Of a stretch of 64,000 nucleotides of DNA, positions 10,994-46,854 are shown in pieces (position 1 is the stretch's first letter; the number at the start of each line of letters is the position of its first letter). The DNA lies in the NCBI RefSeq assembly GCF_016432865.1, contig NC_067404.1, forward strand, positions 54,002,001-54,066,000, written 5' to 3'. A program made the translations under genes and the position numbers. This DNA comes from Antechinus flavipes (lineage: Eukaryota). Below the pieces are notes generated by a model. That model ran no database searches, was not told the DNA's origin, and saw only the letters and a list, made by a program, of their open reading frames with translations.

Positions 10994-13900
10994 GACTTAA
11001 TAAATTATTGTTGAATGAACAGAAGAGAAATTACTTTCTCAAAGTAACTTGTTCAAAAGACTGTTTCTTAACCATTTTGAGCCCCTGATGCTCATCTAAG
11101 AACAAATGACCTATCCACATTGGTGAGGAATGAAAGGAGGAAACTGGGGTTCACATAGGGTAAATGATTCCTCCAAAGCCAAACAGCTAAGAAAAGATAG
11201 AGGCTGGATTCAAATCCTAGGTCTCAAAAGCAGAGCCCTTTCCTACACTGTATCTCTGCTTTTGAAGAGGTACGGTATGCTACAGAGAGGATTACATTCG
11301 GAATCAGAGAGACATGGGCTCAAGTCCTGCCCGGTCACATGCTTGTTTGATCTAGAGCAAAATTACTTCAGGCTGAGCCTCAGTTTCCTCCTCTGTCAAA
11401 TAAGCGGGTTAGAGTAGCTGGCTTCTGACATCCTTCTAATTCTATGATACTGTATGTGACCTTAGGGAAACCACCTCCTTTTCCTGGGCCTCAGTTTCCC
11501 CCTCTGTCAAATAAGGAGGTTAGAGTAGCTGGCCTCTGACTCTAATTCGAAGATCCTATATGTGACCTTAAGCTGGGCCTCAGTTTCCCCTTCTGTCGAA
11601 TAAAGGGGTTGGATTAGATGGCCGCTAGGGTCCTTTCTACCTCTAAACCAAGGGGCCCGTATTCTTCAACCCACATATACACCAGAGTAAGATATCAACT
11701 ATGTTACTAAGTTACTATATTTTATATTAATATATTATAATGTCTCTAACAAATGCTTGGGGATTCAAGGCGTCCATTCGTTTAACTATGGGAACAACCC
11801 CAAAACCGAAAGAAGGCAGGGAAAGGAGTGTCAAGTTATCCCACCTTCTCTTCCTTCTCCTTGGACATCCGTCCATCCACCTGAGGATGCTAATTGCTGA
11901 GGAGGGCAATCTCTCTTTCTCTACCTTCGTGGAGCCAAACCATTGAGACGGGTGAAAAGGATGCTACATTTGACCTCACAAGACCCAGATTGAAATCGAG
12001 CCAGTGACTACGGACTCTCTGAACCTCGGTTTTCTTCTCTCTAGAAGGAGAATAATAATGCGAGCCACCTACCTGGAAGGGGAGGGGGAGATTGGTGAGG
12101 AAGAAAGTCCTTTGGTAAATGGAACTTGTGGTGATTATTAACACGTCTTTAGCATTGAGTTCTAAGAAGAGTGTTTGGAGTCCAGTAGTCTAGAAGATCA
12201 AGGGCCTCAGTGTTGGTCTGCCAGGGCTCCACCCCTTGGGAGGAGAACAGAAAGTCCAGTCAGCCCTTCTGCCTCTCCCCATCGCGGTTTCAATACAGCA
12301 CGATATGGAATCAGCATAAGAAATTAAATGGGAGCTTGGGGGAGTTTTCCGGAAGCGTCACACCACCACATAGAGCCTTATGTCCAAATACTTCACTCAG
12401 ATTTTACCACAAGACACCACAAACACCCCATAAAGCAAAAGAAAATATTCCGATTTCTTCCCTGATACAAAGGGAGAGCCAAAACATTTGGGGCAAATTG
12501 CCCAGATGGAGGCGGCGTCCCTCTGACCAGCCTGTGCCCTCCTCCCCACCTCCCACCTTGTGGAAGGGATAACTGTATTCCTTAGATCAAGGCAAGATGA
12601 AAGGATGAGGTCGATTCTGCGTCTTTTCGAATTGATCCTGTTTCTAATTGATTTTTTGTCCTATCACGGGCCTGAGTCTGGCTTTTTGTCTCTGAACTTA
12701 GTATAAAACTCAGCTGAACTGTCATGAGGTAAGTTCAGAGATCCAGTTTTCCCATTAATCAGTCCCCAAAACTATAAAAGGGAGCTGCCCCCCTCATTTG
12801 GGGTCTTAGTTTTGCTGAGATCTTTTATTGGTAAGTTAATACTTTACTAATAAATTGACCTGAGTTCAAATCTGGTCTCGGACACTTAATGCTTCCTAGC
12901 TGTGTGACCCTGGGCAAGTCACTTAACCCCAAGCACCTCAGCAAAAAAGAAAAAGAAAAGTTCAGTGGGCCCCCAATTTCTTTCAGTTTCACAGAGATAA
13001 CTCATATCATTTTTTGGACTGGAGGAGGGACCAGACCTGAGATTTCATTGATGTAGGGAACAATTTCCAGTGTGGAAATTACCTTCACGAATGCTAGTAG
13101 GCAGTTTTTCTGTAAGCAACGGTCCTAAAAGCTATCTCAGGCGCTGGAAGGTTAATTGACTTGCCTACTGCCAGAGTTTCACACGAAGACATTATGGGCC
13201 CGACCTGTGACGCGAGGGGGCCTTCTTTACTTTGTTTGGAAGCATGAGCGAAAACAAACGTCAGCAGGTTCTGCTGCGAACCCAAATTGGAGACAGAAAG
13301 GATGGGGGGCAGCTCCCTTGATTTTCCATCTGGTTTCAAAATTCCCATTTCTCCCATCATGGCTGGAAATAACTTGGTCTAATGGTAAAAGCACAGGCCT
13401 GGAAGTCGGTCATCTTAAGTTCCAAATTGGGGTCTGCCACTGGACCACCCAGAAACCCCTTTCTGTTGCCTCGCTTTGTCTGTAATTTGAATGGGGGCAA
13501 CGGGGAATCTCTGTGCCCATAGGCCATATTGAATAGCTCTCTCAAATAGCAAATCCTACAGAAAGCCCAGAGATCTTGTCGTAGGTTTATCACGCTATAT
13601 CAACATTAAATTTTGGGAAACGAGAAAAATTGCACAAGGAAACATGTCACGAAAAGGGCGTGGAACTTGGGACGGAGAAAACTCAGTGCTATCCCTCCCT
13701 ATATGACTTCAGACAAGTCCCCTTTACTCTCTGTGACCCAGTGGACCTACTTCCCAGGAGGTACAGAGGCAGTGTGGTATCACGGAATGAGCACTGAATT
13801 TAAGAGGCGAAAGACCCGAGTTTGAATCCTGACTTTACTACTTCCTAGTTGTGTGACCTTGTGAGCATATCCATTCCTCACCGTGGGCCTCAGTTTCCCT

Positions 13901-29376: not shown

Positions 29377-29478
29377 CTTGCCCCCATTGGTGTACTTCTG
29401 GATGAGAGTGGTGCTAATTCCCGGAACCGTCAGACATACGGCCATGACCGCCAGACCCGGAAGAATTTCAAACCACAT
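29377..29478 (-). CDS. NDUFA1: NDUFA1 exon 1 coding part (102 nt)
   Basis: [34 protein letters not shown]|gtaggt; diagnostic MWFE N-terminus. Confidence 0.97.
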
Positions 29479-30779
<1,301 letters not shown>

Positions 30780-30797
30780 ACCTAGTGAAACTAGAAG

Positions 30798-30803
30798 AAT
30801 AAA
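30798..30803 (+). terminator. RNF113A: RNF113A poly(A) signal
   Basis: AATAAA 18 nt after the stop, followed by gttgctcttttc. Confidence 0.75.
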
Positions 30804-30904
30804 GTTGCTCTTTTCAAAGTTCGACCTGAGTGGAAATTGTTGATTGCAGGGGCGCCTGGGGGGGAGGGGGGAGGGGGAAAGAGGAAGGAGTGGAGGGAAA
30901 ACAA

Positions 30905-33900
30905 TAGGGAAGCTTGGATTGTCTGGTGTCCCTTTTGGCTAAACGGTGGGGAATGGGGGGAGGGGGATAGTTTGCATTGTCTGGTATCCATCCTGGCTAA
31001 ACTTGGCTGGGGGGGAGGGGCCCTTAGATTAGCCTTGTATTCACTCTAGCTAAATTGAGCTACATTTGGGGGGCCCTTGGATTTGCCTGTTATCCCTTCT
31101 GGCTAAATTGAGCTCCAGTTGGGGGCCCCATGGATTTGCCTGGTACCCATGATTTCTGGTGAAACTGGGGTGGAGGTGGACCTGTTTACCCTTCTGGCTA
31201 AATTGAGCTAGAATTGGGGGGAGCTTGGATTTTCCTGGTATCAAAAAAAAAAAAAAAAGATTTACCTGGTATCCCTTCTGGCTAAATTGAACTGGGGTGG
31301 GGGGCCCTTGGATTTGCCTCTTATTCATTCTGGCTAAATTGGGCTAGAGTTGGGGGGGGACTAGAGTATTTACCTGGTACCCATGATTTCTGGTGAAACT
31401 GGGGTGGAGGTGGACCTGTTTTCCCTTCTGGATAAATTAAGTTAGAATTGGGGGCCCCTTGGGTTTGCCTTGTATTCATTCTGGCTAAATTGAGCTAGAG
31501 TTGGGGGGCCCTTGAACTTGCCTGTTATCCCTTCTGGCTAAATTGAGCTAGAGTTGGGGGGAGCTTGGATTTGCCTGGTACCCATGATTTCTGGTGAAAC
31601 TGGGGTGGAGGTGGACCTGTTTTCCCTTCTGGATAAATTGAGCTAGAATTGGGGGCCCCTTGGATTTGCCTTGTATTCATTTTGGCTAAATTGAGCTAGA
31701 GTTGGGGGGCCCTTGGACTTGCCTGTTATCCCTTCTGGCTAAATTGAGCTAGAATTGGGGAGAGCTTGGATTTGCCTGCTATCCCTTTTGGCTAAATTGA
31801 GCTGGGGTTGGGGGGAGCTTAGATTTGCCTGGTATTCACTCTGGCTAAATTGAACTAGATTTGGGGGGCCCTTGGATTTGTTTAGTATCCCTTCTGGCTA
31901 AATTGAACTAGAATTGGGGGGAGCTAAGATTTACCTGATATGAAAAAAAAAAGAGATTTACCTGGTATCCCTTCTGGCTAAATTAAGCTGGAGTTGGGGG
32001 GAGCTTGGATTTGCCTGGTATTCATTCTGGCTAAATTGAACTAGAGTTGGGGGGCCCTTGGATTTGCCTGGTATCAAAAAAAAAAGATTTACCTGGTATC
32101 CCTTCTGGCTAAATTGAGCTAGGGTGGGGGGGCCCTTGGATTTGCTTAGTATCCCTTCTGGCTAAATTGAACTAGAATTGGGGGGAGCTAAGATTTACCT
32201 GGTATCCAAAAAAAAAAAAGATTTACCTGGTATCCCTTCTGGCTAAATTGAACTAGAATTGGGGGGAGCTAAGATTTACCTGGTATGAAAAAAAAAAAGA
32301 CTTACCTGGTATCCCTTCTGGCTAAATTGAACTGGGGTGGGGGGGCCCTTGGATTTGCCTCTTATTCATTCTGGCTAAATTGGGCTAGAGTTGGGGGGGG
32401 GCTAGAGTATTTACCTGGTACCCATGATTTCTAGTGAAACTGGGGTGGATGTGGACCTGGTATCCCTTCTGGATAAATTGAGCTAGAATTGGGGGCCCCT
32501 TGGATTTGCCTTGTATTCATTCTGGCTAAATTGAGCTACAGTTGGGGGGCCCTTGGACTTGCCTGTTATCCCTTCTGGCTAAATTGAGCTAGAGTTGGGG
32601 GGAGCTTGGATTTGCCTGGTACCCATGATTTCTGGTGAAACTGGGGTGGAGATGGACCTGTTTTCCCTTCTGGCTAAATTGAGCTAGAATTGGGGAGAGC
32701 TTAGATTTTGCCTGTTATCCCTTCTGGGTAAGTTGAGCTGGGGTTGGGGGGAGCTTGGATTTGCCTGGTATTCATTCTGGCTAAATTGAACTAGATTTGG
32801 GGGGCCCTTGGATTTGTCTGGTACCCATGATTTCTTGTGAAACTGGGGAAGAGGTGGACCTGGTATCCCTTCTGGCTAAATTGAGCTAGAGTTGGGGGGC
32901 CCTTTGATTTTCCTGGTATCCCTTCTGGCTAAATTGAACTAGAATTGTGGGGAGCTAAGATTTACCTGGTATCCCCCCCAAAAAAAATATTTACCTGGTA
33001 TCCCTTCTGGCTAAATTGAGCTAGAGTTGGGGGGCCCTTGGATTTGCCTGGTATCCTTTCTGGCTAAATTGAATTAGAATTGGGGAGAGCTAAGATTTAC
33101 CTGGTATCCAAAAAAAAAAAGATTTACCTGGTATCCCTTCTGGCTAAATTGAACTGGGGTGGGGGGTCCTTGGATTTGCCTCTTATTCATTCTGGCTAAA
33201 TTGGGCTAGAGTTGGGGGGGCTAGAGTATTTACCTGGTACCCATGATTTCTGGTGAAATTGGGGTGGAGGTGGACCTGTTTTCCCTTCTGGATAAATTGA
33301 GCTAGAATTGGGGGCCCCTTGGATTTGCCTTGTATTCATTCTGGCTAAATTGAGCTACAGTTGGGGGGCCCTTGGACTTGCCTGTTATCCCTTCTGGCTA
33401 AATTGAGCTAGAATTGGGGAGAGCTTGGACTTGCCTGCTATCCCTTTTGGCTAAATTGAGCTGGGGTTGGGGGGAGCTTAGATTTGCCTGGTATTCACTC
33501 TGGCTAAATTGAACTAGATTTGGGGGGCCCTTGGATTTGCTTAGTATCCCTTCTGGCTAAATTGAACTAGAATTGGGGGGAGCTAAGATTTACCTGGTAT
33601 GAAAAAAAAAAAAAAGATTTACCTGGTATCCCTTCTGGCTAAATTAAGCTAGAGTTGGGGGGAGCTTGGATTTGCCTGGTACCCATGATTTCTGGTGAAA
33701 CTGGGGTGGAGATGGACCTGTTTTCCCTTCTGGATAAATTGAGCTAGAATTGGGGGCCCCTTGGATTTGCCTTGTATCCCTTCTGGCTAAATTGAGCTTG
33801 AATTGGGGGGAGCTTGGATTTGCCTTGTATCCCTTCTGGCTAAATTGAGCTAGAATTGGGGAGAGCTTGGATTTGCCTGCTATCCCTTCTGGCTAAATTG

Positions 33901-36900
33901 AGCTAGAATTGGGGGGAGCTTAGATTTTGCCTGTTATCCCTTCTGGCTAAATTGAGCTAGAATTGGGGGAAGCTTAGATTTACCTAGTACCCATGATTTC
34001 TAGTGAAAGTGAGGTGGAGGTGGACCTGCTATCCCTTCTGGCTAAATTAGAGTTGGGGGGCCCTTGAATTTGCCTGATATCCTTTCTGGCTAAATTGAGC
34101 TAGAGTTGGGGGGCCCTTTGATTTTCCTGGTATCCCTTCTGGTTAAATTGAGCTAGAGCTGGGGGGCCCTTGGACTTGCCTGTTATCCCTTCTGGCTAAA
34201 TTGAGCTAGAATTGGGGGGAGCTTAGATTTTGCCTGTTATCCCTTCTGGCTAAATTGAGCTGGGGTTGGGGGGAGCTTGGATTTGCCTGGTATTCACTCT
34301 GGCTAAATTGAACTAGATTTGGGGGGCCCTTATATTTGCCTGGTACCCATGATTTCTGGTGAAACTGGGGTAGAGGTGGACCTGGTATCCCTTCTGGCTA
34401 AATTGAACTGGGGTGGGGGGGGGGCGGCCCTTGGATTTGCCTCTTATTCATTCTGGCTAAATTGGGCTAGAGTTGGGGGGGCTAGAGTAATTTACCTGGT
34501 ACCCATGATTTCTGGTGAAACTGGGGTGGAGGTGGACCTGTTTTCCCTTCTGGATAAATTGAGCTGGAATTGGGGGCCCCTTGGATTTGCCTTGTATTCA
34601 TTCTGGCTAAATTGAGCTAGAGTTGGGGGGCCCTTGGATTTGCCTGCTATCCCTTCTGGCTAAATTGAGCTAGAATTGGGGGGAGCTTAGATTTTGCCTG
34701 TTATCCCTTCTGGGTAAATTGAGCTGGGGTTGGGGGGAGCTTAGATTTGCCTGGTATTCACTCTGGCTAAATTGAACTAGAATTGGGGGGAGCTTGGATT
34801 TGCCTGGTATCAAAAAAAAAAAAGATTTACCTGGTATCCCTTCTGGCTAAATTGAACTGGGGCGGGGGGGCCCCTTGGATTTGCCTCTTATTCATTCTGG
34901 CTAAATTGGGCTAGAGTTGGGGGGGGACTAGAGTATTTACCTGGTACCCATGATTTCTGGTGAAACTGGGGTGGAGGTGGACCTGTTTTCCCTTCTGGAT
35001 AAATTAAGTTAGAATTGGGGGCCCCTTGGGTTTGCCTTGTATTCATTCTGGCTAAATTGAGCTAGAGTTGGGGGGCCCTTGAACTTGCCTGTTATCCCTT
35101 CTGGCTAAATTGAGCTAGAGTTGGGGGGAGCTTGGATTTGCCTGCTATCCCTTTTGGCTAAATTGAGCTGGGGTTGGGGGGAGCTTAGATTTGCCTGGTA
35201 TTCACTCTGGCTAAATTGAACTAGAGTTGGGGGGGCCCTTGGATTTGTTTAGTATCCCTTCTGGCTAAATTGAACTAGAATTGGGGGGAGCTAAGATTTA
35301 CCTGATATGAAAAAAAAAAGAGATTTACCTGGTATCCCTTCTGGCTAAATTAAGCTGGAGTTGGGGGGAGCTTGGATTTGCCTGGTATTCATTCTGGCTA
35401 AATTGAACTAGATTTGGGGGGCCCTTGGATTTGTCTGGTACCCATGATTTCTTGTGAAACTGGGGAAGAGGTGTACCTGGTATCCCTTCTGGCTAAATTG
35501 AGCTAGAGTTGGGGGGCCCTTTGATTTTCCTGGTATCCCTTCTGGCTAAATTGAACTAGAATTGTGGGGAGCTAAGATTTACCTGGTATCCCCCCCAAAA
35601 AAATATTTACCTGGTATCCCTTCTGGCTAAATTGAGCTAGAGTTGGGGGGCCCTTGGATTTGCCTGGTATCCTTTCTGGCTAAATTGAATTAGAATTGGG
35701 GGGAGCTTATCCCTTTTGGCTAAATTGAGCTGGGGTTGGGGAGAGCTAAGATTTACCTGGTATCCAAAAAAAAAAAAAGATTTTCCTGGTATCCCTTCTG
35801 GCTAAATTGAACTGGGGTGGGGGGGCCCTTGGATTTGCCTCTTATTCATTCTGGCTAAATTGGGCTAGAGTTGGGGGGGCTAGAGTATTTACCTGGTACC
35901 CATGATTTCTGGTGAAACTGGGGTGGAGGTGGACCTGTTTTCCCTTCTGGATAAATTAAGTTAGAATTGGGGGCCCCTTGGGTTTGCCTTGTATTCATTC
36001 TGGCTAAATTGAGCTAGAGTTGGGGGGCCCTTGAACTTGCCTGTTATCCCTTCTGGCTAAATTGAGCTAGAGTTGGGGGGAGCTTGGATTTGCCTGGTAC
36101 CCATGATTTCTGGTGAAACTGGGGTGGAGGTGGACCTGTTTTCCCTTCTGGATAAATTGAGCTAGAATTGGGGGCCCTTGGATTTGCCTTGTATTCATTC
36201 TGGCTAAATTGAGCTAGAGTTGGGGGGCCCTTGGACTTGCCTGTTATCCCTTCTGGCTAAATTGAGCTAGAATTGGGGAGAGCTTGGATTTGCCTGCTAT
36301 CCCTTTTGGCTAAATTGAGCTGGGGTTGGGGGGAGCTTAGATTTGCCTGGTATTCACTCTGGCTAAATTGAACTAGATTTGGGGGGCCCTTGGATTTGCT
36401 TAGTATCCCTTCTGGCTAAATTGAACTAGAATTGGGGGGAGCTAAGATTTACCTACTGTGAAAAAAAAAAGAGATTTACCTGGTATCCCTTCTGGCTAAA
36501 TTAAGCTGGAGTTGGGGGGAGCTTGGATTTGCCTGGTATTCATTCTGGCTAAATTGAGGTAGAGTTGGGGGGCCCTTGGATTTGCCTGGTACCCATGATT
36601 TCTTGTGAAACTGGGGTAGAGGTGGACCTGGTATCCCTTCTGGCTAAATTGATCTAGAGTTGGGGGGCCCTTTGATTTTCCTGGTATCCCTTCTGTCTAA
36701 ATTGAACTAGAATTGGAGGGAGCTAAGATTTACCTGGTATCCCCCCCAAAAAAAATATTTACCTGGTATCCCTTCTGGCTAAATTGAGCTAGAGTTGGGG
36801 GGGCCTTGGATTTGCCTGGTATCCTTTCTGGCTAAATTGAATTAGAATTGGGGGGAGCTAAGATTTACCTAGTATGAAAAAAAAAAGACTTACCTGGCAT

Positions 36901-39900
36901 CCCTTCTGGCTAAATTGAACTGGGGTGGGGGGGCCCTTGCATTTGCCTCTTATTCATTCTGGCTAAATTGGGCTAGAGTTGGGGGGGGCTAGAGTATTTA
37001 CCTGGTACCCATGATTTCTGGTGAAACTGGGGTGGAGGTGGACATGGTATCCCTTCTGGATAAATTGAGCTAGAATTGGGGGCCCCTTGGATTTGCCTTG
37101 TGTCCCTTCTGGCTAAATTGAGCTTGAATTGGGGGGAGCTTGGATTTTGCCTGTTATCCCTTCTGGCTAAATTGAGCTAGAATTGGGGGAAGCTTAGATT
37201 TACCTAGTACCCATGATTTCTAGTGAAAGTGAGGTGGAGGTGGACCTGCTATCCCTTCTGGCTAAATTAGAGTTGGGGGGCCCTTGAATTTGCCTGATAT
37301 CCTTTCTGGCTAAATTGAGCTAGAGTTGGGGGGCCCTTTGATTTTCCTGGTATCCCTTCTGGTTAAATTGAGCTAGAGTTGGGGGACCCTTGGACTTGCC
37401 TGTTATCCCTTCTGGCTAAATTGAGCTAGAATTGGGGGGAGCTTAGATTTTGCCTGTTATCCCTTCTGGGTAAGTTGAGCTGGGGTTGGGGGGAGCTTGG
37501 ATTTGCCTGGTATTCATTCTGGCTAAATTGAACTAGATTTGGGGGGCCCTTGGATTTGTCTGGTACCCATGATTTCTTGTGAAACTGGGGTAGAGGTGGA
37601 CCTGGTATCCCTTCTGGCTAAATTGAGCTACAGTTGGGGGGCCCTTGGATTTGCCTGGTATCCTTTCTGGCTAAATTGAATTAGAATTGGGGGGAGCTAA
37701 GATTTACCTGGTATGAAAAAAAAAAAGACTTACCTGGCATCCCTTCTGGCTAAATTGAACTGGGGTGGGGGGCCCTTGGATTTGCCTCTTATTCATTCTG
37801 GCTAAATTGGGCTAGAGTTGGGGGGGCTAGAGTATTTACCTGGTACCCATGATTTCTGGTGAAACTGGGGTGGAGGTGGACCTGGTATCCCTTCTGGATA
37901 AATTGAGCTAGAATTGGGGGCCCTTGGATTTGCCTTGTATTCATTCTGGCTAAATTGAGCTACAGTTGGGGGGCCCTTGGACTTGCCTGTTATCCCTTCT
38001 GGCTAAATTGAGCTAGAGTTGGGGGAAGCTTAGATTTACCTAGTACCCATGATTTCTAGTGAAACTGGGGTGGAGGTGGACCTGCTATCCCTTTTGGCTA
38101 AATTAAACTAGAATTGGGGGGCCCTTGGATTTGCCTGATATCCCTTCTGGCTAAATTGAGCTAGAATTGGGGGCCCTTGGATTTGCCTGGTACCCATGAT
38201 TTCTGGTGAAACTGGGGTGGAGGTGGACCTGGTATCCCTTCTGGATAAACTGAGCTAGATTTGGGGGGCCTTGGATTTGCCTGGTATCCTTTCTGGCTAA
38301 ATTGAACTAGAATTGGGGGGAGCTAAGATGTACCTGGTATCAAAAAAAAAAAAAAAGATTTACCTGGTATCCCTTCTGGCTAAATTAAGCTAGAGTTGGG
38401 GGGAGCTTGGATTTGCCTAGTATTCATTCTGGCTAAATTGAACTAGAGTTGGGGGGCCCTTGGATTTGCCTGGTATCAAAAAAAAAAAAGATTTACCTGG
38501 TATCCCTTCTGGCTAAATTCAGCTAGGGTGGGGGGCCCTTGGATTTGCTTAGTATCCCTTCTGGCTAAATTGAACTAGAATTGGGGGGAGCTAAGATTTA
38601 CCTGGTATGAAAAAAAAAAGACCTGGCATCCCTTCTGGCTAAATTGAACTGGGGTGGGGGGCCCTTTGATTTGCCTCTTATTCATTCTGGCTAAATTGGG
38701 CTAGAGTTGGGGGGGCTAGAGTATTTACCTGGTACCCATGATTTCTGGTGAAACTGGGGTGGAGGTGGACCTGTTTTCCCTTCTGGATAAATTGAGCTAG
38801 AATTGGGGCCCCCTTGGATTTGCCTTGTGTCCCTTCTGGCTAAATTGAGCTAGAATTGGGGAGAGCTTGGATTTGCCTGCTATCCCTTCTGGCTAAATTG
38901 AGCTAGAATTGGGGGGAGCTTAGATTTACCTAGTACCCATGATTTCTAGTGAAACTGAGATGGAGGTGGACCTGCTATCCCTTCTGGCTAAATTAGAGTT
39001 GGGGGGCCCTTGAATTTGCCTGATATCCTTTCTGGCTAAATTGAGCTAGAGTTGGGGGGCCCTTTGATTTTCCTGGTATCCCTTCTGGTTATATTGAGCT
39101 AGAGTTGGGGGGCCCTTGGACTTGCCTGTTATCCCTTCTGGCTAAATTGAGCTAGAATTGGGGGGAGCTTAGATTTTGCCTGTTATCCCTTCTGGCTAAA
39201 TTGAGCTGGGGTTGGGGGGAGCTTGGATTTGCCTGGTATTCACTCTGGCTAAATTGAACTAGATTTGGGGGGCCCTTATATTTGCCTGGTACCCATGATT
39301 TCTGGTGAAACTGGGGTAGAGATGGACCTGGTATCCCTTCTGGTTAAATTGAGCTAGAGTTGGGGGACCCTTGGACTTGCCTGTTATCCCTTCTGGCTAA
39401 ATTGAGCTAGAATTGGGGGGAGCTTAGATTTTGCCTGTTATCCCTTCTGGGTAAGTTGAGCTGGGGTTGGGGGGAGCTTGGATTTGCCTGGTATTCATTC
39501 TGGCTAAATTGAACTAGATTTGGGGGGCCCTTGGATTTGTCTGGTACCCATGATTTCTTGTGAAACTGGGGTAGAGGTGGACCTGGTATCCCTTCTGGCT
39601 AAATTGAGCTACAGTTGGGGGGCCCTTGGATTTGCCTGGTATCCTTTCTGGCTAAATTGAATTAGAATTGGGGGGAGCTAAGATTTACCTGGTATGAAAA
39701 AAAAAGACTTACCTGGCATCCCTTCTGGCTAAATTGAACTGGGGTGGGGGGGCCCTTGGATTTGCCTCTTATTCATTCTGGCTAAATTGGGCTAGAGTTG
39801 GGGGGGCTAGAGTATTTACCTGGTACCCATGATTTCTGGTGAAACTGGGGTGGATGTGGACCTGGTATCCCTTCTGGATAAATTGAGCTAGAATTGGGGG

Positions 39901-42900
39901 CCCCTTGGATTTGCCTTGTATTCATTCTGGCTAAATTGAGCTACAGTTGGGGGGCCCTTGGACTTGCCTGTTATCCCTTCTGGCTAAATTGAGCTAGAGT
40001 TGGGGGAAGCTTAGATTTACCTAGTACCCATGATTTCTAGTGAAACTGGGGTGGAGGTGGACCTGCTATCCCTTTTGGCTAAATTAAACTAGAATTGGGG
40101 GGCCCTTGGATTTGCCTGATATCCCTTCTGGCTAAATTGAGCTAGAATTGGGGGCCCCTTGGATTTGCCTGGTACCCATGATTTCTGGTGAAACTGGGGT
40201 GGAGGTGGACCTGGTATCCCTTCTGGATAAACTGAGCTAGATTTGGGGGGCCTTGGATTTGCCTGGTATCCTTTCTGGCTAAATTGAACTAGAATTGGGG
40301 GGAGCTAAGATGTACCTGGTATCAAAAAAAAAAAAAAAAGATTTACCTGGTATCCCTTCTGGCTAAATTAAGCTAGAGTTGGGGGGAGCTTGGATTTGCC
40401 TAGTATTCATTCTGGCTAAATTGAACTAGAGTTGGGGGGCCTTGGATTTGCCTGGTATCAAAAAAAAAAAAAAGATTTACCTGGTATCCCTTCTGGCTAA
40501 ATTCAGCTAGGGTGGGGGGCCCTTGGATTTGCTTAGTATCCCTTCTGGCTAAATTGAACTAGAATTGGGGGGAGCTAAGATTTACCTGGTATGAAAAAAA
40601 AAAGACCTGGCATCCCTTCTGGCTAAATTGAACTGGGGTGGGGGGCCCTTTGATTTGCCTCTTATTCATTCTGGCTAAATTGGGCTAGAGTTGGGGGGGC
40701 TAGAGTATTTACCTGGTACCCATGATTTCTGGTGAAACTGGGGTGGAGGTGGACCTGTTTTCCCTTCTGGATAAATTGAGCTAGAATTGGGGCCCCCTTG
40801 GATTTGCCTTGTGTCCCTTCTGGCTAAATTGAGCTAGAATTGGGGAGAGCTTGGATTTGCCTGCTATCCCTTCTGGCTAAATTGAGCTAGAATTGGGGGC
40901 CCCTTGGATTTGCCTTGTGTCCCTTCTGGCTAAATTGAGCTAGAATTGGGGAGAGCTTGGATTTGCCTGCTATCCCTTCTGGCTAAATTGAGCTAGAATT
41001 GGGGGGAGCTTAGATTTACCTAGTACCCATGATTTCTAGTGAAACTGAGATGGAGGTGGACCTGCTATCCCTTCTGGCTAAATTAGAGTTGGGGGGCCCT
41101 TGAATTTGCCTGATATCCTTTCTGGCTAAATTGAGCTAGAGTTGGGGGGCCCTTTGATTTTCCTGGTATCCCTTCTGGTTATATTGAGCTAGAGTTGGGG
41201 GGCCCTTGGACTTGCCTGTTATCCCTTCTGGCTAAATTGAGCTAGAATTGGGGGGAGCTTAGATTTTGCCTGTTATCCCTTCTGGCTAAATTGAGCTGGG
41301 GTTGGGGGGAGCTTGGATTTGCCTGGTATTCACTCTGGCTAAATTGAACTAGATTTGGGGGGCCCTTATATTTGCCTGGTACCCATGATTTCTGGTGAAA
41401 CTGGGGTAGAGATGGACCTGGTATCCCTTCTGGCTAAATTGAGCTAGAATTGGGGGGAGCTTGGACTTGCCTGTTTTCCCTTCTGGCTAAATTGAACTAG
41501 AGTTGGGGGGCCCTTGGATTTGCCTGGTACCCATGATTTCTTGTGAAACTGGGGTAGAGGTGGACCTGGTATCCCTTCTGGCTAAATTGATCTAGAATTG
41601 GGGGGCCCTTTGATTTTCCTGGTATCCCTTCTGTCTAAATTGAACTAGAATTGGGGGGAGCTAAGGTTTACCTGGTATCCCCCCAAAAAATATTTACCTG
41701 GTATCCCTTCTGGCTAAATTGAGCTAGAGTTGGGGGGCCCTTGGATTTGCCTGGTATTCTTTCTGGCTAAATTGAATTAGAATTGGGGGGAGCTAAGATT
41801 TACCTAGTATAAAAAAAAAAAGACTTACCTGGCATCCCTTCTGGCTAAATTGAACTGGGGCGGGGGGGCCCTTGGATTTGCCTCTTATTCATTCTGGCTA
41901 AATTGGGCTAGAGTTGGGGGGGCTAGAGTATTTACCTGGTACCCATGATTTCTGGTGAAACTGGGGTGGAGGTGGACCTGGTATCCCTTCTGGATAAATT
42001 GAGCTAGAATTGGGGGCCCCTTGGATTTGCCTTGTATTCATTCTGGCTAAATTGAGCTAGAGTTGGGGGGGAGCTTGGATTTGCCTGATATCAAAAAAAA
42101 AAAAAATGATTTACCTGGTATCCCTTCTGGATAAACTGAGCTGGGGGGGGGGGGGGCCTTGGATTTGCTTCTTATTCATTCTGGCTAAATTGAACTAGAA
42201 TTAGGGGGAGCTTAGATTTGCCTGGTATCCCTTCTAGCTAAATTGAGCTAGAGTTGGGGGAAGCTTAGATTTACCTAGTACCCATGATTTCTAGTGAAAC
42301 TGGGGTGGAGGTGGACCTGCTATCCCTTCTGGCTAAATTAAACTAGAATTGGGGGGCCCTTGGATTTGCCTGATATCCCTTCTGGCTAAATTGAACTGTA
42401 GTTGGGGGGAGCTTGGACTTGCCTGTTATCCCTTCTGGCTAAATTGAGCTAGAGTTGGGGGGCTCTTGGACTTGCCTGTTATCCATTCTGGCTAAATTGA
42501 GCTAGAGTTGGGGGGCCCTTGGACTTGCCTGTTATCCCTTCTGGATAAATTGAGCTAGGGTGAGGGGGAGCTTTGATTTGCCTCTTATTCATTCTGACTA
42601 AATTAAACTAGAGTTGGGGTGCCCTTGGATTTGCCTGGTATCCCTTCTGGCTAAATTGAGCTAGAATTGGGGAGAGCTTGGATTTGCCTGCTATCCCTTT
42701 TGGCTAAATTGAGCTGGGGTTGGGGGGAGCTTAGATTTGCCTGGTATTCACTCTGGCTAAATTGAACTAGATTTGGGGGGCCCTTGGATTTGCTTAGTAT
42801 CCCTTCTGGCTAAATTGAACGAGAATTGGGGGGAGCTAAGATTTACCTGGTATGAAAAAAAAAAAAAAAGATTTACCTGGTATCCCTTCTGGATAAATTG

Positions 42901-42990
42901 AGCTAGTGGGGGGGGCGGAGCTTGGATTTGCCAGTTACCCATGATCTCTGGTGAAAGTGGGGTGGAGGTGGAGGTGGAGAATGTAGATGC
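30905..42990. repeat. ~12-kb complex tandem array: 53-bp A units, 42-bp B units and A-tract C cassettes, with higher-order structure
   Basis: A = ctggtatcccttctggctaaattgagctagagttggggggcccttggatttgc (~180 copies, estimated); B = ctggtacccatgatttctggtgaaactggggtggaggtggac (~35); C = ctggtat(c/g)A(n)gatttac (27 counted). Degenerate monomers at both edges. Confidence 0.97.
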
Positions 42991-44250
42991 TTAAATACCT
43001 GGTATCTGTGGGGTACCTAGGTACCAAGTCACACAATTGGGCTGGGGTAGGCTTGTTTTTGCTTGTTACCCAGCGTTCAAAGTAATCTGCCTGACTAATG
43101 TGCCAGCTTTAAAGATCTGGGGTACACTTTGAAAAAACTCCCAAAGGTGCAATGTATAAAACATTTATTTAAGAACTTACTATACACAATGCCCAAAGAT
43201 ACAGTCCATGGAGGAGAGAACACATGAAAGGTTTCAGTGGGAAAGTCCCATGAGCCTTAGGCTGCATCAGCAAAGCAGATGATGATATAATAAAAGTTTT
43301 TGTTGTGTTTCATAATATTGGGACATTTCTTTACCATCCTAGATTTAGCATTGAAAGGGACCTCAGAGGCCACTTACTCCAAACCTCTCTTTATAAAGAG
43401 GAAGAAAACTTCTGTCCATTTGCTATACTCATTCTTTCGAAGTAGAATGATTCTGGAAGAGTGCTGCATTTATTAATGAAGGAAGGAAGGAATATTTGAA
43501 TGAATAAGTGTTAAGCACCTGCTAAATTCTAGAGGTAAAATACTAAACCTAGATCATTTTGTCTAAGGAGTGGTCCATTAAACTATTCATTTGGCCTCTG
43601 ACCCCTTTGCTTCCAATATTTATTTGACATTCTCCATTTGCTATCAGCAGTAAACATTAAGCTTACCTTTATTGTCCCAGTGTGAGGTCCTACTCCAGAA
43701 AGGCCTGACCAGTTCAATCAGGGGGACAGACCTTAAGGTTTTTTGAATTGATCTGGTGAATATCCTTTTGAATTGTGAACTTGACTGAAGGACTGAACTC
43801 CATTGCCTGATTGACTAGCTTTTGATCTGGTTGTATTAGATTACAGCGACTGCTATTCATTTCCATGGCTGAATCGGTGCAGATTCCTATAATGCACAGA
43901 ACTATTGGACTTTTCTGTAATATACTTGTGTGGCCAGCCATTTACAGTGACTTCTTCTGGAAGTGACATTGTAGGGATTGTGAAAGATTGTCAGCCTATA
44001 AATTCATCTGAGTATAATTAATAGGCTAGAATCAACTGCTTTTTTTCGACATAAATGTCAAATCTATTTCTCTGGCCCTAACCTTTTAGCCCAGTGCCAA
44101 TTAGATACCCTCTCCCTCTTGCCTACTAAATATTTTTGCTTAAATTTATCCTTCAAAAACTTTCCCCCAAATTAATCTTTTGATCTACTGTGCAGGGTGA
44201 TTGCATGAAATGAGTCAGTAACTAAAATACCAACACATATCTTTGCAGCT

Positions 44251-44472
44251 TGAAGGTCACACATTTATACTTTTTACTTAGAACATATCTTTTTGGAGTC
44301 TCACTATCATACATTTGTACTTTTTACGTGAAGATTTGGCGCCTGAAGGTCATACATTCGCACTTTTTACTTACAAAATATCTTTTTGGAGTCTCAAGAT
44401 CATAAATTTATACTTTTTACTTCAAGAGTTGGGGCCTGAAGGTCATAAATTTATACTTTTTATTTCAAGATG
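44251..44472. repeat. 93-bp tandem repeat (~2.4 copies, 51+42 substructure)
   Basis: tgaaggtca at 44251, 44344 and 44437; a ttt(a/g)tacttttta-like motif recurs every 42-51 bp. Confidence 0.8.
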
Positions 44473-45604
44473 AATTTTAAAATAGGGATGGGGGTCAGGT
44501 CCATAGGCTGAAGTTGACCTGGAACTTGGGTATTTCAATAGATTGGTGAGCTCATCAATCTAGACCCCTGCAACTCCATAAATCAAAAGCTATAACTTAT
44601 AATTCTGAAAACAAACAAACCCACCCCCCCAAAAAACATTGGTTTATAAGTTTTAGGCTTCAAAGGAAAGTGTTGGTTGTTTTAAATATGTTGCTGGATT
44701 TGTGTAGCACTTTATACTGTCTGAGTTGTCTCTGAACGATTTTTGTCTTGCCACCTGTGTACTGTCCCCAGGTATATCTCATTGTCCCCAGCTGTATCTC
44801 ATTTCCTTAGTTTCAGGTTCTGCCGCTCACTGACTTTTTTTCTAGATTTAAACCCTCCGTCCCTCTCTCAGGCTGTAGTTAGTCTCCCCCCCCCCTTTTT
44901 TCCCTCCCTCCCTTTCATTTAAAACAGCCATGATACTAAAGTGACATACATTTACTCTTAAGGAGGACGTTCCCTTCCCTTAACTCCAAAAAGTAACTGA
45001 AATTCAGCAACCCAGTGACCCAAGTTTGAGAAATTTCACTTTTTTCTTGATTCTTCTCTTCCCTCTTCTTTACAGCCCATGGTCCACCATGCACAATGAG
45101 GTGCCATATCCTGCTGATTCAATCTATACAACATATCAAGACTAAAAAACCCTTTAAGATTTAGAGGAGGAAGGCACTTTAAGATTATCTAATCCCAAAA
45201 TATGCAGTGACCAGAGCATTGGACTTAGTGCTGAGTTCAGATTTGAACTCGGACACTTCCTACCTGTATGACTCTGAACAAATCACTATCTACCTCAGTT
45301 TCCTCATGTCTAAAATAGGGATAATATCTATCTCTCAGACGTGAAGATAAATGAGATATTAAGACACTTTGGTAGGTATTTTTACAGGTGAGGAACCATA
45401 CTCAGGGCAAACGTCTCTAGCAGTTTTGAAAACAAAATTAAAATCCAGTTCCTCTATCCCCATATGTATTTAGTGCTGCAACTAAGTCAACAACTTGGGA
45501 ATTTATAGTATTATTCAAACAATAATTTAAGATTATCCGTCATTTAGGTTAGGACCAGCAAGCTTTGCAAGCCTGGTAGAAGTGACTGAAGTCAACCCAG
45601 GAGT

Positions 45605-45850
45605 GATTGTTTATTAAGTGCCCAGATGCAGGACCCCGAGTCAGGAAGGCTCATTTTCCCCGAGTTCCAACCTTGCCTCAGGCACTTATTAGCTGTGTGA
45701 CCCTGAGTAAATCACTTTACCCTGCTTGCCTCCGTTTCCTTATCTGTAAAATGAGCTGGAGAAGGAAACGGCGCACCATTCCGGTTTCTTTGCCAAGAAT
45801 GGGCCAAATGGTGTTCCGAAGAGGGGGAAACGACGGAACATTCAGGCGCT
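45605..45850 (+). mobile_element. MAR1-like CORE SINE with RTE-derived tail
   Basis: gagtcaggaag...gctgtgtgaccctgagtaaatcacttt...ctgtaaaatgagctggagaaggaaacggc...tttgccaagaa. Confidence 0.75.
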
Positions 45851-46189
45851 GGATACCAGGGTGCAGGATTACAATATAGAAGACAAGCGAAGGGTTCAAA
45901 GTTTCCAACCTTTTTCTTACTTTTTTTTATTTGGGAGAAACGAGTATTTGTAAAAAGAAAATAAATATTAATTGAAAGGGGGTGAAGTGAGGGTGGGATG
46001 TAATAAAGGATCGGGAGGTCCATGCAAAGGTGGGAAATCAGGGTGTAACGTGGGTAACTCCAAGGATGCAGGGCAAGCTACTAAGCCATCTCTACAGCCC
46101 AACCCCTTCCGTGCAGTCGGAGTCCCGGGGCCCCGAGTGCATCTTGGCATGCTGGATCTTGTAGTTCTCAAGGCAGTAGACTAAACTTG

Positions 46190-46482: not shown

Positions 46483-46854
46483 ATGAAAGAAGATAAGGAG
46501 AAAGCGAGGCCCAAGGAGAAGCGGCCGCCCTCGTTGGCAGTCTCGTCTGCAGCAGCGACAGCAGCAGCAGCAGCAGAGACAGCGGCGGCGGCGGTCACCA
46601 AAGCAGCGGTTACCGCAGCTGCGGCGGCGGTAACTGCAGCCTCAGCCCCAGCCCCGGCCCCTGCCCCAGCTCCAACCCCGGCCCCGGCCCCAGCCCCAGC
46701 CCCAGCTCCAGCTCCAACCCCGGCCCCGGCCCCACCCCCAGCTCCAGTTCCAGCTCCCCCTGCAGCGAGCTTCGGCGGCGGCGCGGCAGCGGACTACGCT
46801 AAGACCCAGGACAGAAAGCCCGAGCGATTCAAAGACAAGGAGATGCTGAGCAAG
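46483..46854 (+). CDS. UPF3B: Regulator of nonsense transcripts 3B, exon 1 (124 codons, Ala/Pro-Ala expanded)
   Basis: gccATG AAA GAA GAT AAG (MKEDKEKARPKEKR, cf. human MKEEKEHRPKEKR)...EMLSK|gtgcga. Confidence 0.92.

What the first reader, a model, noticed from the sequence alone, without database searches (positions are those of the whole stretch)
30905..42990. ~12-kb three-cassette tandem array between RNF113A and UPF3B in an X-linked gene block
Seen: a non-coding array (TAA in almost every monomer) fills most of the RNF113A-UPF3B interval. All cassettes begin at a shared CTGGTA-type junction, but the payload switches among a 53-bp unit (~180), a 42-bp unit (~35) and an A-tract unit (27), in a non-random order. 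Edge monomers are degenerate and the interior is homogeneous, as expected under concerted evolution. It sits among essential housekeeping genes, with no sign of centromeric or telomeric context. Established: these genes lie in the conserved therian X region, and X-linked tandem arrays (eutherian DXZ4/FIRRE, marsupial RSX) have chromatin-architecture or silencing roles. Inference: a lineage-specific X macrosatellite-like element. I do not recognise this monomer from known repeat families, but I cannot search databases.
Basis: partly seen in the sequence, partly recalled or inferred. Interest (0 to 1): 0.8.

Follow-up and report, generated by a model that had tools for sequence, protein, structure and literature searches.

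The report
Dasyurid X-linked minisatellite behind RNF113A
The 12-kb repeat between RNF113A and UPF3B is real, but it is an ordinary though unusually large and well-traceable minisatellite, which grew in carnivorous marsupials from a few G-rich repeat units that all marsupials carry just behind the RNF113A gene, and it has none of the sequence hallmarks of the X-chromosome architecture repeats it was compared with.

Summary
Observation confirmed. Window 30920-42973 is a head-to-tail array of 249 units: 186 of 53 bp (A), 36 of 42 bp (B) and 27 poly(A) units (C). B and C never touch each other. AAC, AAB and AAAB are the commonest compound units.

The genome is Antechinus flavipes, X chromosome, assembled from a male with PacBio reads.

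The array starts about 115 bp after the RNF113A poly(A) signal and ends 3.5 kb before the UPF3B start codon. Both edges align to orthologous sequence in other marsupials.

- Opossum, koala, bilby, Dromiciops and brushtail possum carry only 3-6 degenerate ~50-70-bp proto-units at this spot.
- Platypus has none.
- Tasmanian devil has a ~2.5-kb array and the dunnart at least 9.4 kb.
- Tammar has an independent 129-bp x 10 expansion.

So this is an in-situ minisatellite (VNTR) expansion, neither a transposon nor a dispersed satellite.

It fails the tests for a DXZ4/FIRRE-type macrosatellite. The unit is 53 bp rather than about 3 kb, there are 6 CpGs in 12 kb, and no unit carries a CTCF consensus.

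The only conserved property is a strong G-richness on the sense strand just downstream of the poly(A) site. That fits a Pol II pause/termination zone, but this role is untested. RNA, chromatin and copy-number variation could not be tested.

Verdict: new member of a known kind, modest interest.

The parts
29724..30779 (+). RNF113A coding sequence (single exon, 351 aa), stop TAA at 30777-30779
   Evidence: ORF. It is 100% identical to the collection's own entry and 95% to Sminthopsis RNF113A. Coordinates checked.
30798..30803 (+). RNF113A poly(A) signal AATAAA
   Evidence: The signal is conserved in the alignment of six marsupials.
30858..30877 (+). G7-A-G6-A-G5 run about 55 bp after the poly(A) signal. 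It resembles the G-rich MAZ-type pause element (the resemblance is from my own knowledge). G-rich blocks stand at this position in all marsupials aligned.
30907..31138 (+). Degenerate left-edge units, orthologous to the first ancestral proto-units of other marsupials
   Evidence: Alignment A1. Unit scores are low at the edge.
30920..42973 (+). The compound minisatellite: 186 A (53 bp), 36 B (42 bp) and 27 C (poly-A) units
37346..38915 (+). First copy of a recent ~1.98-kb internal duplication (99.4% identical to 39327-40899)
   Evidence: Self-BLAST.
39327..40899 (+). Second copy of the recent internal duplication
42931..42990 (+). Terminal B-like unit that keeps the ancestral tail (GAGAATG..GCTTAAAT). 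It is the orthologue of the second proto-unit of koala, bilby and Dromiciops.
   Evidence: Alignment A2 and unit alignment.
42991..43140 (+). Unamplified last proto-units and the conserved right-flank anchor (TTCAAAGTAATCTGC ... GATCTGGGGTACACTTTGAA)
   Evidence: Alignment A2. The flank is collinear with opossum, koala, bilby and Dromiciops.
46483..46840 (+). UPF3B exon 1 (MKEDKEK..., the end is approximate) inside a CpG island

Best explanation
This is a compound minisatellite (VNTR-type array). It was born in place by repeated unequal exchange or replication slippage of a short, G-rich proto-repeat that lies directly behind the RNF113A poly(A) site in all marsupials examined.

The ancestral state was 3-6 degenerate units of about 50-70 bp, of the form GCTTGGATTGCCTGGTAYCC..TTCTGGCTAAACTGGGGTGGAG. 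In the ancestor of dasyurids a 53-bp derivative (A) began to amplify. A 42-bp derivative of the second proto-unit (B) is found amplified in Antechinus and the devil, but not in the dunnart stretch read. In Antechinus a third, poly(A)-centred deletion derivative (C) arose. Blocks such as AAC, AAB and AAAB, and kilobase-sized blocks, were then re-duplicated.

Shown: the structure, the in-situ origin, the orthologous anchoring of both edges, the lineage distribution, and the absence of CTCF, CpG and macrosatellite features.

Inferred: the expansion itself is neutral or nearly so. Its most likely cis effect, if any, is the one the seed sequence probably already had. The seed is a G-rich region on the non-template strand downstream of the RNF113A poly(A) signal, the kind of region that slows RNA polymerase II and helps termination before the co-oriented UPF3B promoter. 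The expansion also adds a 12-kb spacer between the two genes.
For: Structure.

Orthologous arrays downstream of RNF113A:
- Sminthopsis crassicaudata, 53-bp period, at least 177 copies, running off the fetched locus.
- Sarcophilus harrisii, ~2.5 kb, with 44 A-profile and 7 B-profile matches.

Only 3-6 proto-units at the same place in Monodelphis, Phascolarctos, Macrotis, Dromiciops and Trichosurus. No match at all in platypus.

Both edges of the array align to the outgroup sequence, and the rest of the interval is collinear.

A and B units align to the ancestral units, and the terminal B keeps the ancestral tail.

The A consensus is 51/53 identical between Antechinus and the devil, and about 41/53 to the dunnart. 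Poly(A) units occur only in Antechinus.

There is an independent 129-bp x 10 expansion of the same seed in the tammar.

No copy lies elsewhere in the 64-kb window or in the flanks of the other loci.

In whole-genome contigs of independent runs, words of the array stand at only about 2-20 times the depth of the unique flank. The left junction is recovered in at least two organism labels.

The G skew is +0.24 to +0.54 in every marsupial cluster or array, against about 0 in the flanks. There are 142 G6 runs on the + strand of the array and 4 C6 runs.

G-rich pause elements downstream of poly(A) signals promote termination through R-loops (PMC3145960).
Against: - No RNA, R-loop, Pol II or chromatin data could be laid on the array. 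All runs found were DNA contigs.
- The core motif GCTTGGATTGCCTGGTA has been kept in several copies for about 72-80 million years (split dates from PMC9290055). This may mean a sequence-specific factor binds it, which I could not identify.
- The state in eutherians is unknown. Both bovid loci fetched lack the NDUFA1 neighbour.
- The copy number in the assembly rests on one PacBio CLR assembly. The 99.4% duplication could be an assembly error.
Confidence: 0.75

Rival explanations
1. Selected cis element. The amplified G-rich array works as an extended Pol II pause/R-loop terminator or insulating spacer. It would protect the UPF3B promoter from read-through out of RNF113A, and the expansion was favoured for that reason.
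For: - The array begins about 115 bp after AATAAA and is co-oriented with both genes.
- The G skew and G-run density on the sense strand are conserved in all nine marsupial loci.
- A G7AG6AG5 block stands 55 bp after the poly(A) signal.
- G-rich pause sites downstream of poly(A) signals drive R-loop-dependent termination (PMC3145960).
Against: - Five marsupial lineages manage with about 250-400 bp of the same sequence, and the intergenic distance there is 4.5-10 kb.
- Array length varies about five-fold among dasyurids.
- No canonical G4 motif (four G3+ runs with loops of 1-7) occurs in the array.
- Dunnart units have lost much of the G content (GC 0.37).
- There are no expression data.
Confidence: 0.15
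2. One reading: an X-chromosome architecture or silencing element comparable to DXZ4, FIRRE or RSX.
For: - It is X-linked (Chr7 of A. flavipes is the X, PMC9290055).
- It is tandem.
- It has stood at this locus in all three dasyurid genomes sampled.
Against: - The unit is 53 bp, not about 3 kb.
- CpG observed/expected is 0.01.
- There is no CTCF consensus in the units. DXZ4 is defined by a 3-kb CpG-rich unit and FIRRE/ICCE by paired CTCF-YY1 sites (PMC6985041).
- The array is only ~2.5 kb in the devil.
- A related expansion exists in the tammar and none in koala, bilby or opossum.
- The window holds no Rfam RNA.
Confidence: 0.05
3. A copy of a dispersed satellite or a transposon-derived tandem repeat that happened to land here.
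For: - The poly(A) units look superficially like retroposon tails.
- I could not search Dfam or Repbase.
Against: - Outgroups carry homologous proto-units at exactly this position, and both edges grade into them.
- There is no other copy in the window or in about 150 kb of fetched flanks.
- Word depth in whole-genome contigs is only 2-20 times that of the unique flank.
- Poly(A) units are missing from the devil and dunnart arrays, so they are a late internal derivative.
Confidence: 0.03
4. An assembly artefact: a much shorter repeat inflated by the assembler.
For: - One 1.98-kb block is duplicated at 99.4%.
- The assembly is from noisy CLR reads (PMC9290055).
Against: - Independent assemblies of two other dasyurids have arrays at the same place.
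- The units are diverged enough (mean identity 0.85) for unique placement.
- The animal is male, so the X is a single haplotype (PMC9290055).
- Array words and the left junction appear in independent DNA runs.
Confidence: 0.02

Closest known systems
Minisatellites / VNTR loci, including documented 'births' such as human MsH42 (cited in PMC7767330) and the large unstable 16q24.1 minisatellite near FOXF1 (PMC4411736; title and abstract only seen)
   Same: - The unit is 10-100 bp, arranged head to tail, in a kilobase-scale array.
- There are internal variant units and higher-order blocks.
- It grew in place from a short proto-repeat.
- Copy number differs widely between related species.
   Different: - It is larger than most (12 kb, 249 units) and made of three unit types in a regular grammar.
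- The seed is traceable across about 72-80 million years of marsupial evolution.
- A second lineage (tammar) expanded the same seed independently.
- Polymorphism within the species has not been measured.
DXZ4 / FIRRE / ICCE X-linked tandem repeats (PMC6985041)
   Same: X-linked, tandem, and not centromeric.
   Different: - DXZ4 has a 3-kb CpG-rich unit, and these repeats bind CTCF (FIRRE and ICCE with paired YY1 sites).
- Here the unit is 53 bp, the array is nearly CpG-free, and the units hold no CTCF consensus.
- No chromatin data are available.
G-rich Pol II pause/termination elements downstream of poly(A) signals (MAZ4, beta-actin pause element; PMC3145960)
   Same: - Position: it starts about 55-115 bp after the poly(A) signal of a gene whose neighbour is co-oriented.
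- It has G runs on the non-template strand.
- This property is conserved across marsupials.
   Different: - Known elements are tens to a few hundred bp, not 12 kb.
- Pausing, R-loops and termination have not been shown here.
RSX, the marsupial X-inactivation RNA with 5' tandem repeats (my own knowledge, not checked here)
   Same: A marsupial X-linked locus that contains tandem repeats.
   Different: - RSX is a different locus and a transcribed long RNA with GC-rich repeats.
- This array lies between two protein-coding genes, is CpG-free, and its transcription is unknown.

Membership tests
Minisatellite / VNTR | Repeat unit of about 10-100 bp (PMC7767330) | tested here: met
   Units of 53, 42 and about 27 bp.
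Minisatellite / VNTR | Head-to-tail tandem array at a single locus | tested here: met
   249 co-oriented units. There is no other copy in the window or the fetched flanks. Word depth in DNA runs is 2-20 times the unique flank. A whole-genome scan was not possible.
Minisatellite / VNTR | Variable copy number | tested here: inconclusive
   Between species the answer is yes: ~2.5 kb in the devil, 12 kb in Antechinus, at least 9.4 kb in the dunnart. Within the species it was not testable, because only collapsed short-read contigs were available.
Macrosatellite of the DXZ4 type | Kilobase-sized (about 3 kb) repeat unit | tested here: not met
   The basic period is 53 bp. The larger blocks are irregular duplications (lags of 839-8259 bp), not a fixed higher-order unit.
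Macrosatellite of the DXZ4 type | CpG-rich unit subject to differential methylation | tested here: not met
   6 CpGs in 12054 bp, observed/expected 0.01.
Macrosatellite of the DXZ4/FIRRE type | CTCF motif in the repeat units | tested here: not met
   The consensus CCASYAGRKGGCRSY (from my own knowledge), with up to 2 mismatches, gives one hit in a degenerate edge unit. The whole window has 8 hits against 5.9 expected.
Macrosatellite of the DXZ4/FIRRE type | Inactive-X-specific chromatin, CTCF binding and looping | not testable with these tools
   No ChIP or Hi-C data are reachable.
Dispersed satellite or transposon-derived repeat | Copies at many loci, or transposon hallmarks around the array | tested here: not met
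   Homologous proto-units stand at the same site in six non-dasyurid marsupials, and both edges are anchored. Word depth is low. Dfam and Repbase are not available.
G-rich pause/termination element | Lies shortly downstream of a functional poly(A) signal and is G-rich on the non-template strand | tested here: met
   AATAAA at 30798. The G-rich block starts at 30858 and the array at 30920. GC skew is +0.25, with 20 G4+ runs per kb against 1.7 C4+ runs.
G-rich pause/termination element | Causes Pol II pausing, R-loop formation and termination | not testable with these tools

The most novel reading that the evidence does not exclude
The short G-rich proto-repeat behind RNF113A is a conserved marsupial terminator or factor-binding cluster that shields the UPF3B promoter. 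Dasyurids (and, separately, the tammar) have amplified it 10- to 80-fold. That would give a natural 'super-terminator', or an R-loop-prone and possibly fragile copy-number-variable element, on the X. Its length could then modulate two dosage-sensitive housekeeping genes, a spliceosome-associated E3 ligase and a nonsense-mediated decay factor.
Probability: 0.12. Interest if true: 0.55.

Novelty: new member of a known kind. Interest (0 to 1): 0.3.

Why it matters
As it stands, this is a clean and well-dated example of how a large minisatellite is born. A 3-6-unit seed has been kept for about 72-80 million years. It expanded in place in one family (Dasyuridae) to 2.5-12 kb, with new unit types arising stepwise, and it expanded independently in a kangaroo relative.

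This makes it a useful marker locus for dasyurid population work, because it is X-linked and probably hypervariable. It is also a caution for assemblies and for read mapping around RNF113A and UPF3B.

It would matter more if the conserved G-rich seed proves to be the RNF113A terminator. Array length would then be a natural dial on read-through into UPF3B.

It does not give marsupials a DXZ4-like element.

Tried and rejected
- CTCF consensus scan: chance level, with one hit in an edge unit.
- Rfam over 28-48 kb: nothing.
- RNA folding of AA dimers on both strands and of an AAC block: not better than shuffles (z +0.5 to +0.7). One ABA block folds well (z -3.4) because the A core is an imperfect 22-bp palindrome. 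By eye, that palindrome is not kept in the dunnart consensus or in the ancestral units (sequences), so I did not build on it.
- Canonical G-quadruplex motifs: none in the array, only two-tetrad candidates in B units.
- Coding potential: none.
- Full-text search of papers for three monomer strings, and for RNF113A/UPF3B/tandem repeat/marsupial: nothing relevant.
- Earlier scan notes: nothing at or near this place, and the gene names stand in no note of this genome.
- Sequencing runs: 9 holders, all whole-genome DNA contigs by their size (~3.1 Gb of contigs), none on record as RNA. Contigs are 60-140-bp collapsed pieces, so they give no copy number, no strand and no expression.
- Eutherian orthologue: the two bovid loci fetched lack NDUFA1 upstream, and one has an A-tail after the 3' UTR. 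They look like retrocopies and say nothing about the orthologous site.
- Full length of the dunnart array: not obtained, because the locus ends inside the array.
- YY1 and NFI motifs were compared by eye only, from memory, and did not fit. I make no claim from this.
Full report
**1. What is there**

Tandem Repeats Finder finds a continuous set of 53-bp and compound-period arrays from 31017 to 42853. The stretch stands out in composition, with GC skew about +0.24 and AT skew about -0.2, against about 0 in the flanks.

I cut the stretch unit by unit against three consensus units. There are 249 units between 30920 and 42973:
- 186 A units of 53 bp;
- 36 B units of 42 bp;
- 27 C units, each CCTGGTATC, then 10-15 A, then GATTTA.

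All three types open with CCTGGTA-like letters, and B is the most uniform type.

The order is far from random. B and C never touch each other or themselves (0 of 20000 shuffles reach this). 34 of 36 B and 25 of 27 C follow AA. The commonest words are AAC (18), AAB (17) and AAAB (9). A units that precede a C carry their own diagnostic letters.

A units are 0.86-0.90 identical to the consensus in the interior and 0.80-0.86 at the two ends. Mean pairwise identity is 0.85. So the array is not young as a whole.

One 1.98-kb block is duplicated at 99.4% (37346-38915 and 39327-40899). Many older kilobase blocks match at 81-94% at irregular lags.

There is no coding potential: the longest stop-free stretch is 102 aa. 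No Rfam family matches.

**2. Where it is**

- RNF113A is the single-exon ORF 29724-30779. Its AATAAA is at 30798-30803.
- A G7AG6AG5 block follows at 30858-30877.
- NDUFA1 starts head-to-head at 29478 on the minus strand.
- UPF3B starts at 46483 in a CpG island.

The array begins about 115 bp after the poly(A) signal. It fills 12.05 kb of the 15.7-kb interval, and both neighbours are on the + strand.

The exact RNF113A protein is encoded on GCA_016432865.2, record CM028223.1, and that locus is letter-for-letter the window. This accession is Antechinus flavipes (PMC11965985). The genome was assembled from a male with 100x PacBio reads, and its Chr7 is the X (PMC9290055).

**3. Related sequences**

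I fetched the orthologous locus, with NDUFA1 upstream in every case, through the RNF113A proteins of other species.

| Species | Locus | What stands behind RNF113A |
|---|---|---|
| Sminthopsis crassicaudata (dunnart) | L001 | 53-bp array from 11657 to the end of the locus; at least 177 copies, at least 9.4 kb |
| Sarcophilus harrisii (devil) | L002 | ~2.5-kb array; 44 matches to the A profile and 7 to the B profile |
| Monodelphis (opossum) | L003 | no array; 3-6 degenerate proto-units |
| Phascolarctos (koala) | L004 | no array; 3-6 degenerate proto-units |
| Macrotis (bilby) | L005 | no array; 3-6 degenerate proto-units |
| Dromiciops | L006 | no array; 3-6 degenerate proto-units |
| Trichosurus (brushtail possum) | L009 | no array; 3-6 degenerate proto-units |
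| Notamacropus eugenii (tammar) | L008 | 129-130-bp unit (two ancestral-type sub-units) x 10.2, about 1.3 kb; a separate expansion of the same seed |
| Platypus | L010 | orthologous by its neighbours; no match to any of the three unit profiles |
| Two bovids | L011, L013 | no NDUFA1 neighbour; they look like retrocopies, so the eutherian state is untested |

The proto-units are about 50-70 bp. They run GCTTGGATTGCCTGGTAYCC, then TTCTGGCTAAACTGGGGTGGAG, then a G-rich spacer.

**4. Origin**

The left edge of the Antechinus, devil and dunnart arrays aligns column by column with the first proto-units of the outgroups (alignment A1).

The right edge does the same (alignment A2). This covers the terminal B-like unit with its ancestral tail, the next two unamplified units, and the anchor TTCAAAGTAATCTGC...GATCTGGGGTACACTTTGAA. 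The rest of the interval up to UPF3B is collinear in all species.

In a joint alignment, A and B both align with the ancestral unit. B keeps its first 42 bp, including CCATGA..TTTCTGG..AAACTGGGGTGGAGGTGGA. A keeps the head and the GCTTGGATTTG tail and has a new middle, AAATTGAGCTAGAG.

The 53-bp A form is shared by all three dasyurids. I therefore infer that it arose before they split, about 25-30 million years ago by my own recollection, which I did not check.

The A consensus is 51/53 identical between Antechinus and the devil, and about 41/53 to the dunnart. Antechinus and devil units are about as similar to each other (0.81) as devil units are among themselves (0.79). Species-specific homogenisation is therefore visible only for the dunnart (0.70 between species, 0.80 within).

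B units occur in Antechinus and the devil but not in the dunnart stretch read.

Poly(A) units occur only in Antechinus: 25 runs of A8 or more, against none in the other two. Contigs of another organism label cover two of them (records 9 and 11). The C unit is therefore a late internal deletion derivative, not a retroposon tail.

This is the classical picture of a minisatellite born in place and reshaped by unequal exchange. A comparable primate case, MsH42, is summarised in PMC7767330.

**5. Is it dispersed or an artefact?**

Profiles of A and B find nothing else in the 64-kb window or in the upstream halves of the loci, apart from two hits at chance level.

The runs that hold words of the array are whole-genome DNA data sets, about 3.1 Gb of contigs each. 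They come from three studies and four organism labels.

Laid on 30780-36700, they give a contig across the RNF113A 3' UTR into the first units:
- in X1, 0 differences;
- in X8, 33 differences and a different unit order.

They also give many 60-140-bp collapsed pieces at 2-20 times the depth of the unique flank. In X1, for example, depth is 9.9 on the flank and 24-71 on the listed pieces, with up to 186 over a B unit.

That is what a few hundred copies at one locus would give, not a genome-wide satellite. It is no proof of copy number, and no RNA run was found.

**6.

DXZ4 has a 3-kb, CpG-rich unit, and FIRRE and ICCE have paired CTCF-YY1 sites (PMC6985041). Here:
- the unit is 53 bp;
- the array holds 6 CpGs (observed/expected 0.01);
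- the CTCF consensus, with up to two mismatches, hits a single degenerate edge unit, while the window as a whole is at chance (8 found, 5.9 expected).

The array is five times shorter in the devil, and a sister expansion exists in a macropod. By unit size it is a minisatellite (10-100 bp, PMC7767330). I therefore do not file it with the macrosatellites. Whether its chromatin differs between the sexes cannot be tested here.

**7. What it may do**

One property is kept in every marsupial cluster or array. The sense strand is G-rich, with GC skew +0.24 to +0.54 and 12-31 runs of G4 or more per kb against 0-4 C runs. The flanks are at about 0.

In the window, 142 of the 173 G6 runs lie in the array, all read on the + strand. 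The G-rich zone starts about 55 bp after the poly(A) signal.

G-rich pause elements at that position slow Pol II and promote R-loop-dependent and Xrn2-dependent termination (PMC3145960). The resemblance of G7AG6AG5 to the MAZ element is from my own knowledge.

I think the seed is probably part of the RNF113A termination zone ahead of the co-oriented UPF3B promoter. I think the dasyurid expansion is most likely a neutral overgrowth of it.

The 17-bp core GCTTGGATTGCCTGGTA has survived in several copies since the split of American and Australasian marsupials, about 72-80 million years ago (PMC9290055). This hints at a binding factor that I could not name.

**8. Verdict**

It is an undescribed member of a known kind.

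The scan's earlier notes hold nothing at this place. Two notes on other pieces of the same genome describe CTCF-bearing minisatellites. That shows the contrast: this array has no such motif.

Noticed in passing
L002:13756-21056 (Sarcophilus), equivalent to window 42963-44949: In the devil, the unique right flank of the array is tandemly triplicated. The copies start at 13756, 15421 and 17922. Copies 2 and 3 carry an extra 0.8-1.2-kb insert after the first ~440 bp. This is a kilobase-unit tandem repeat next to the minisatellite that Antechinus lacks.
   Followed up: partly
L008:11162-12463 (Notamacropus eugenii): An independent expansion of the same proto-repeat: a 129-130-bp dimer unit x 10.2, 81% matches.
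   Followed up: partly
window 46540-46780 (UPF3B exon 1): A long Ala/Thr-rich and then Ala-Pro low-complexity run (AAAT...APAPAPAPTPAP...) in the N-terminal part of UPF3B. Hexamer repeats stand at the matching place in opossum (L003:17792-17893) and brushtail possum (about L009:16488-16611).
   Followed up: no
window 44251-44471: A 93-bp tandem repeat (50 + 43 bp sub-units, 2.3 copies). It is conserved in the devil, where it recurs three times because of the flank triplication.
   Followed up: no
window 33290-33311 and every A unit: The A core TTCTGGCTAAATTGAGCTAGAA is an imperfect 22-bp palindrome (9 Watson-Crick pairs and 1 G-T of 11). An A-B-A block (32562-32709) folds with z = -3.4. By eye, the palindrome is not kept in the dunnart consensus or in the ancestral units.
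   Followed up: partly
L005:11050-11200 (Macrotis lagotis): The bilby has a SINE-like insert with an A-tail inside the RNF113A 3' UTR, ahead of its poly(A) signal.
   Followed up: no
L011:6001-7120 and L013:6001-7110 (Bubalus, Bison): The bovid 'RNF113A' / 'RNF113A-like' genes fetched have no NDUFA1 neighbour and share a 3' flank. In the buffalo an A-run follows it. They are probably a conserved intact retrocopy rather than the X-linked parent gene.
   Followed up: partly
window 45607-45879: A short ORF (MSWRRKRRTIPVSLP...) matches the start of the automatic UPF3B gene call in opossum (L003:17007) and a stretch in Dromiciops (L006:14776). It is a conserved element 600-900 bp upstream of the UPF3B start codon, either promoter-proximal sequence or an old repeat.
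   Followed up: no
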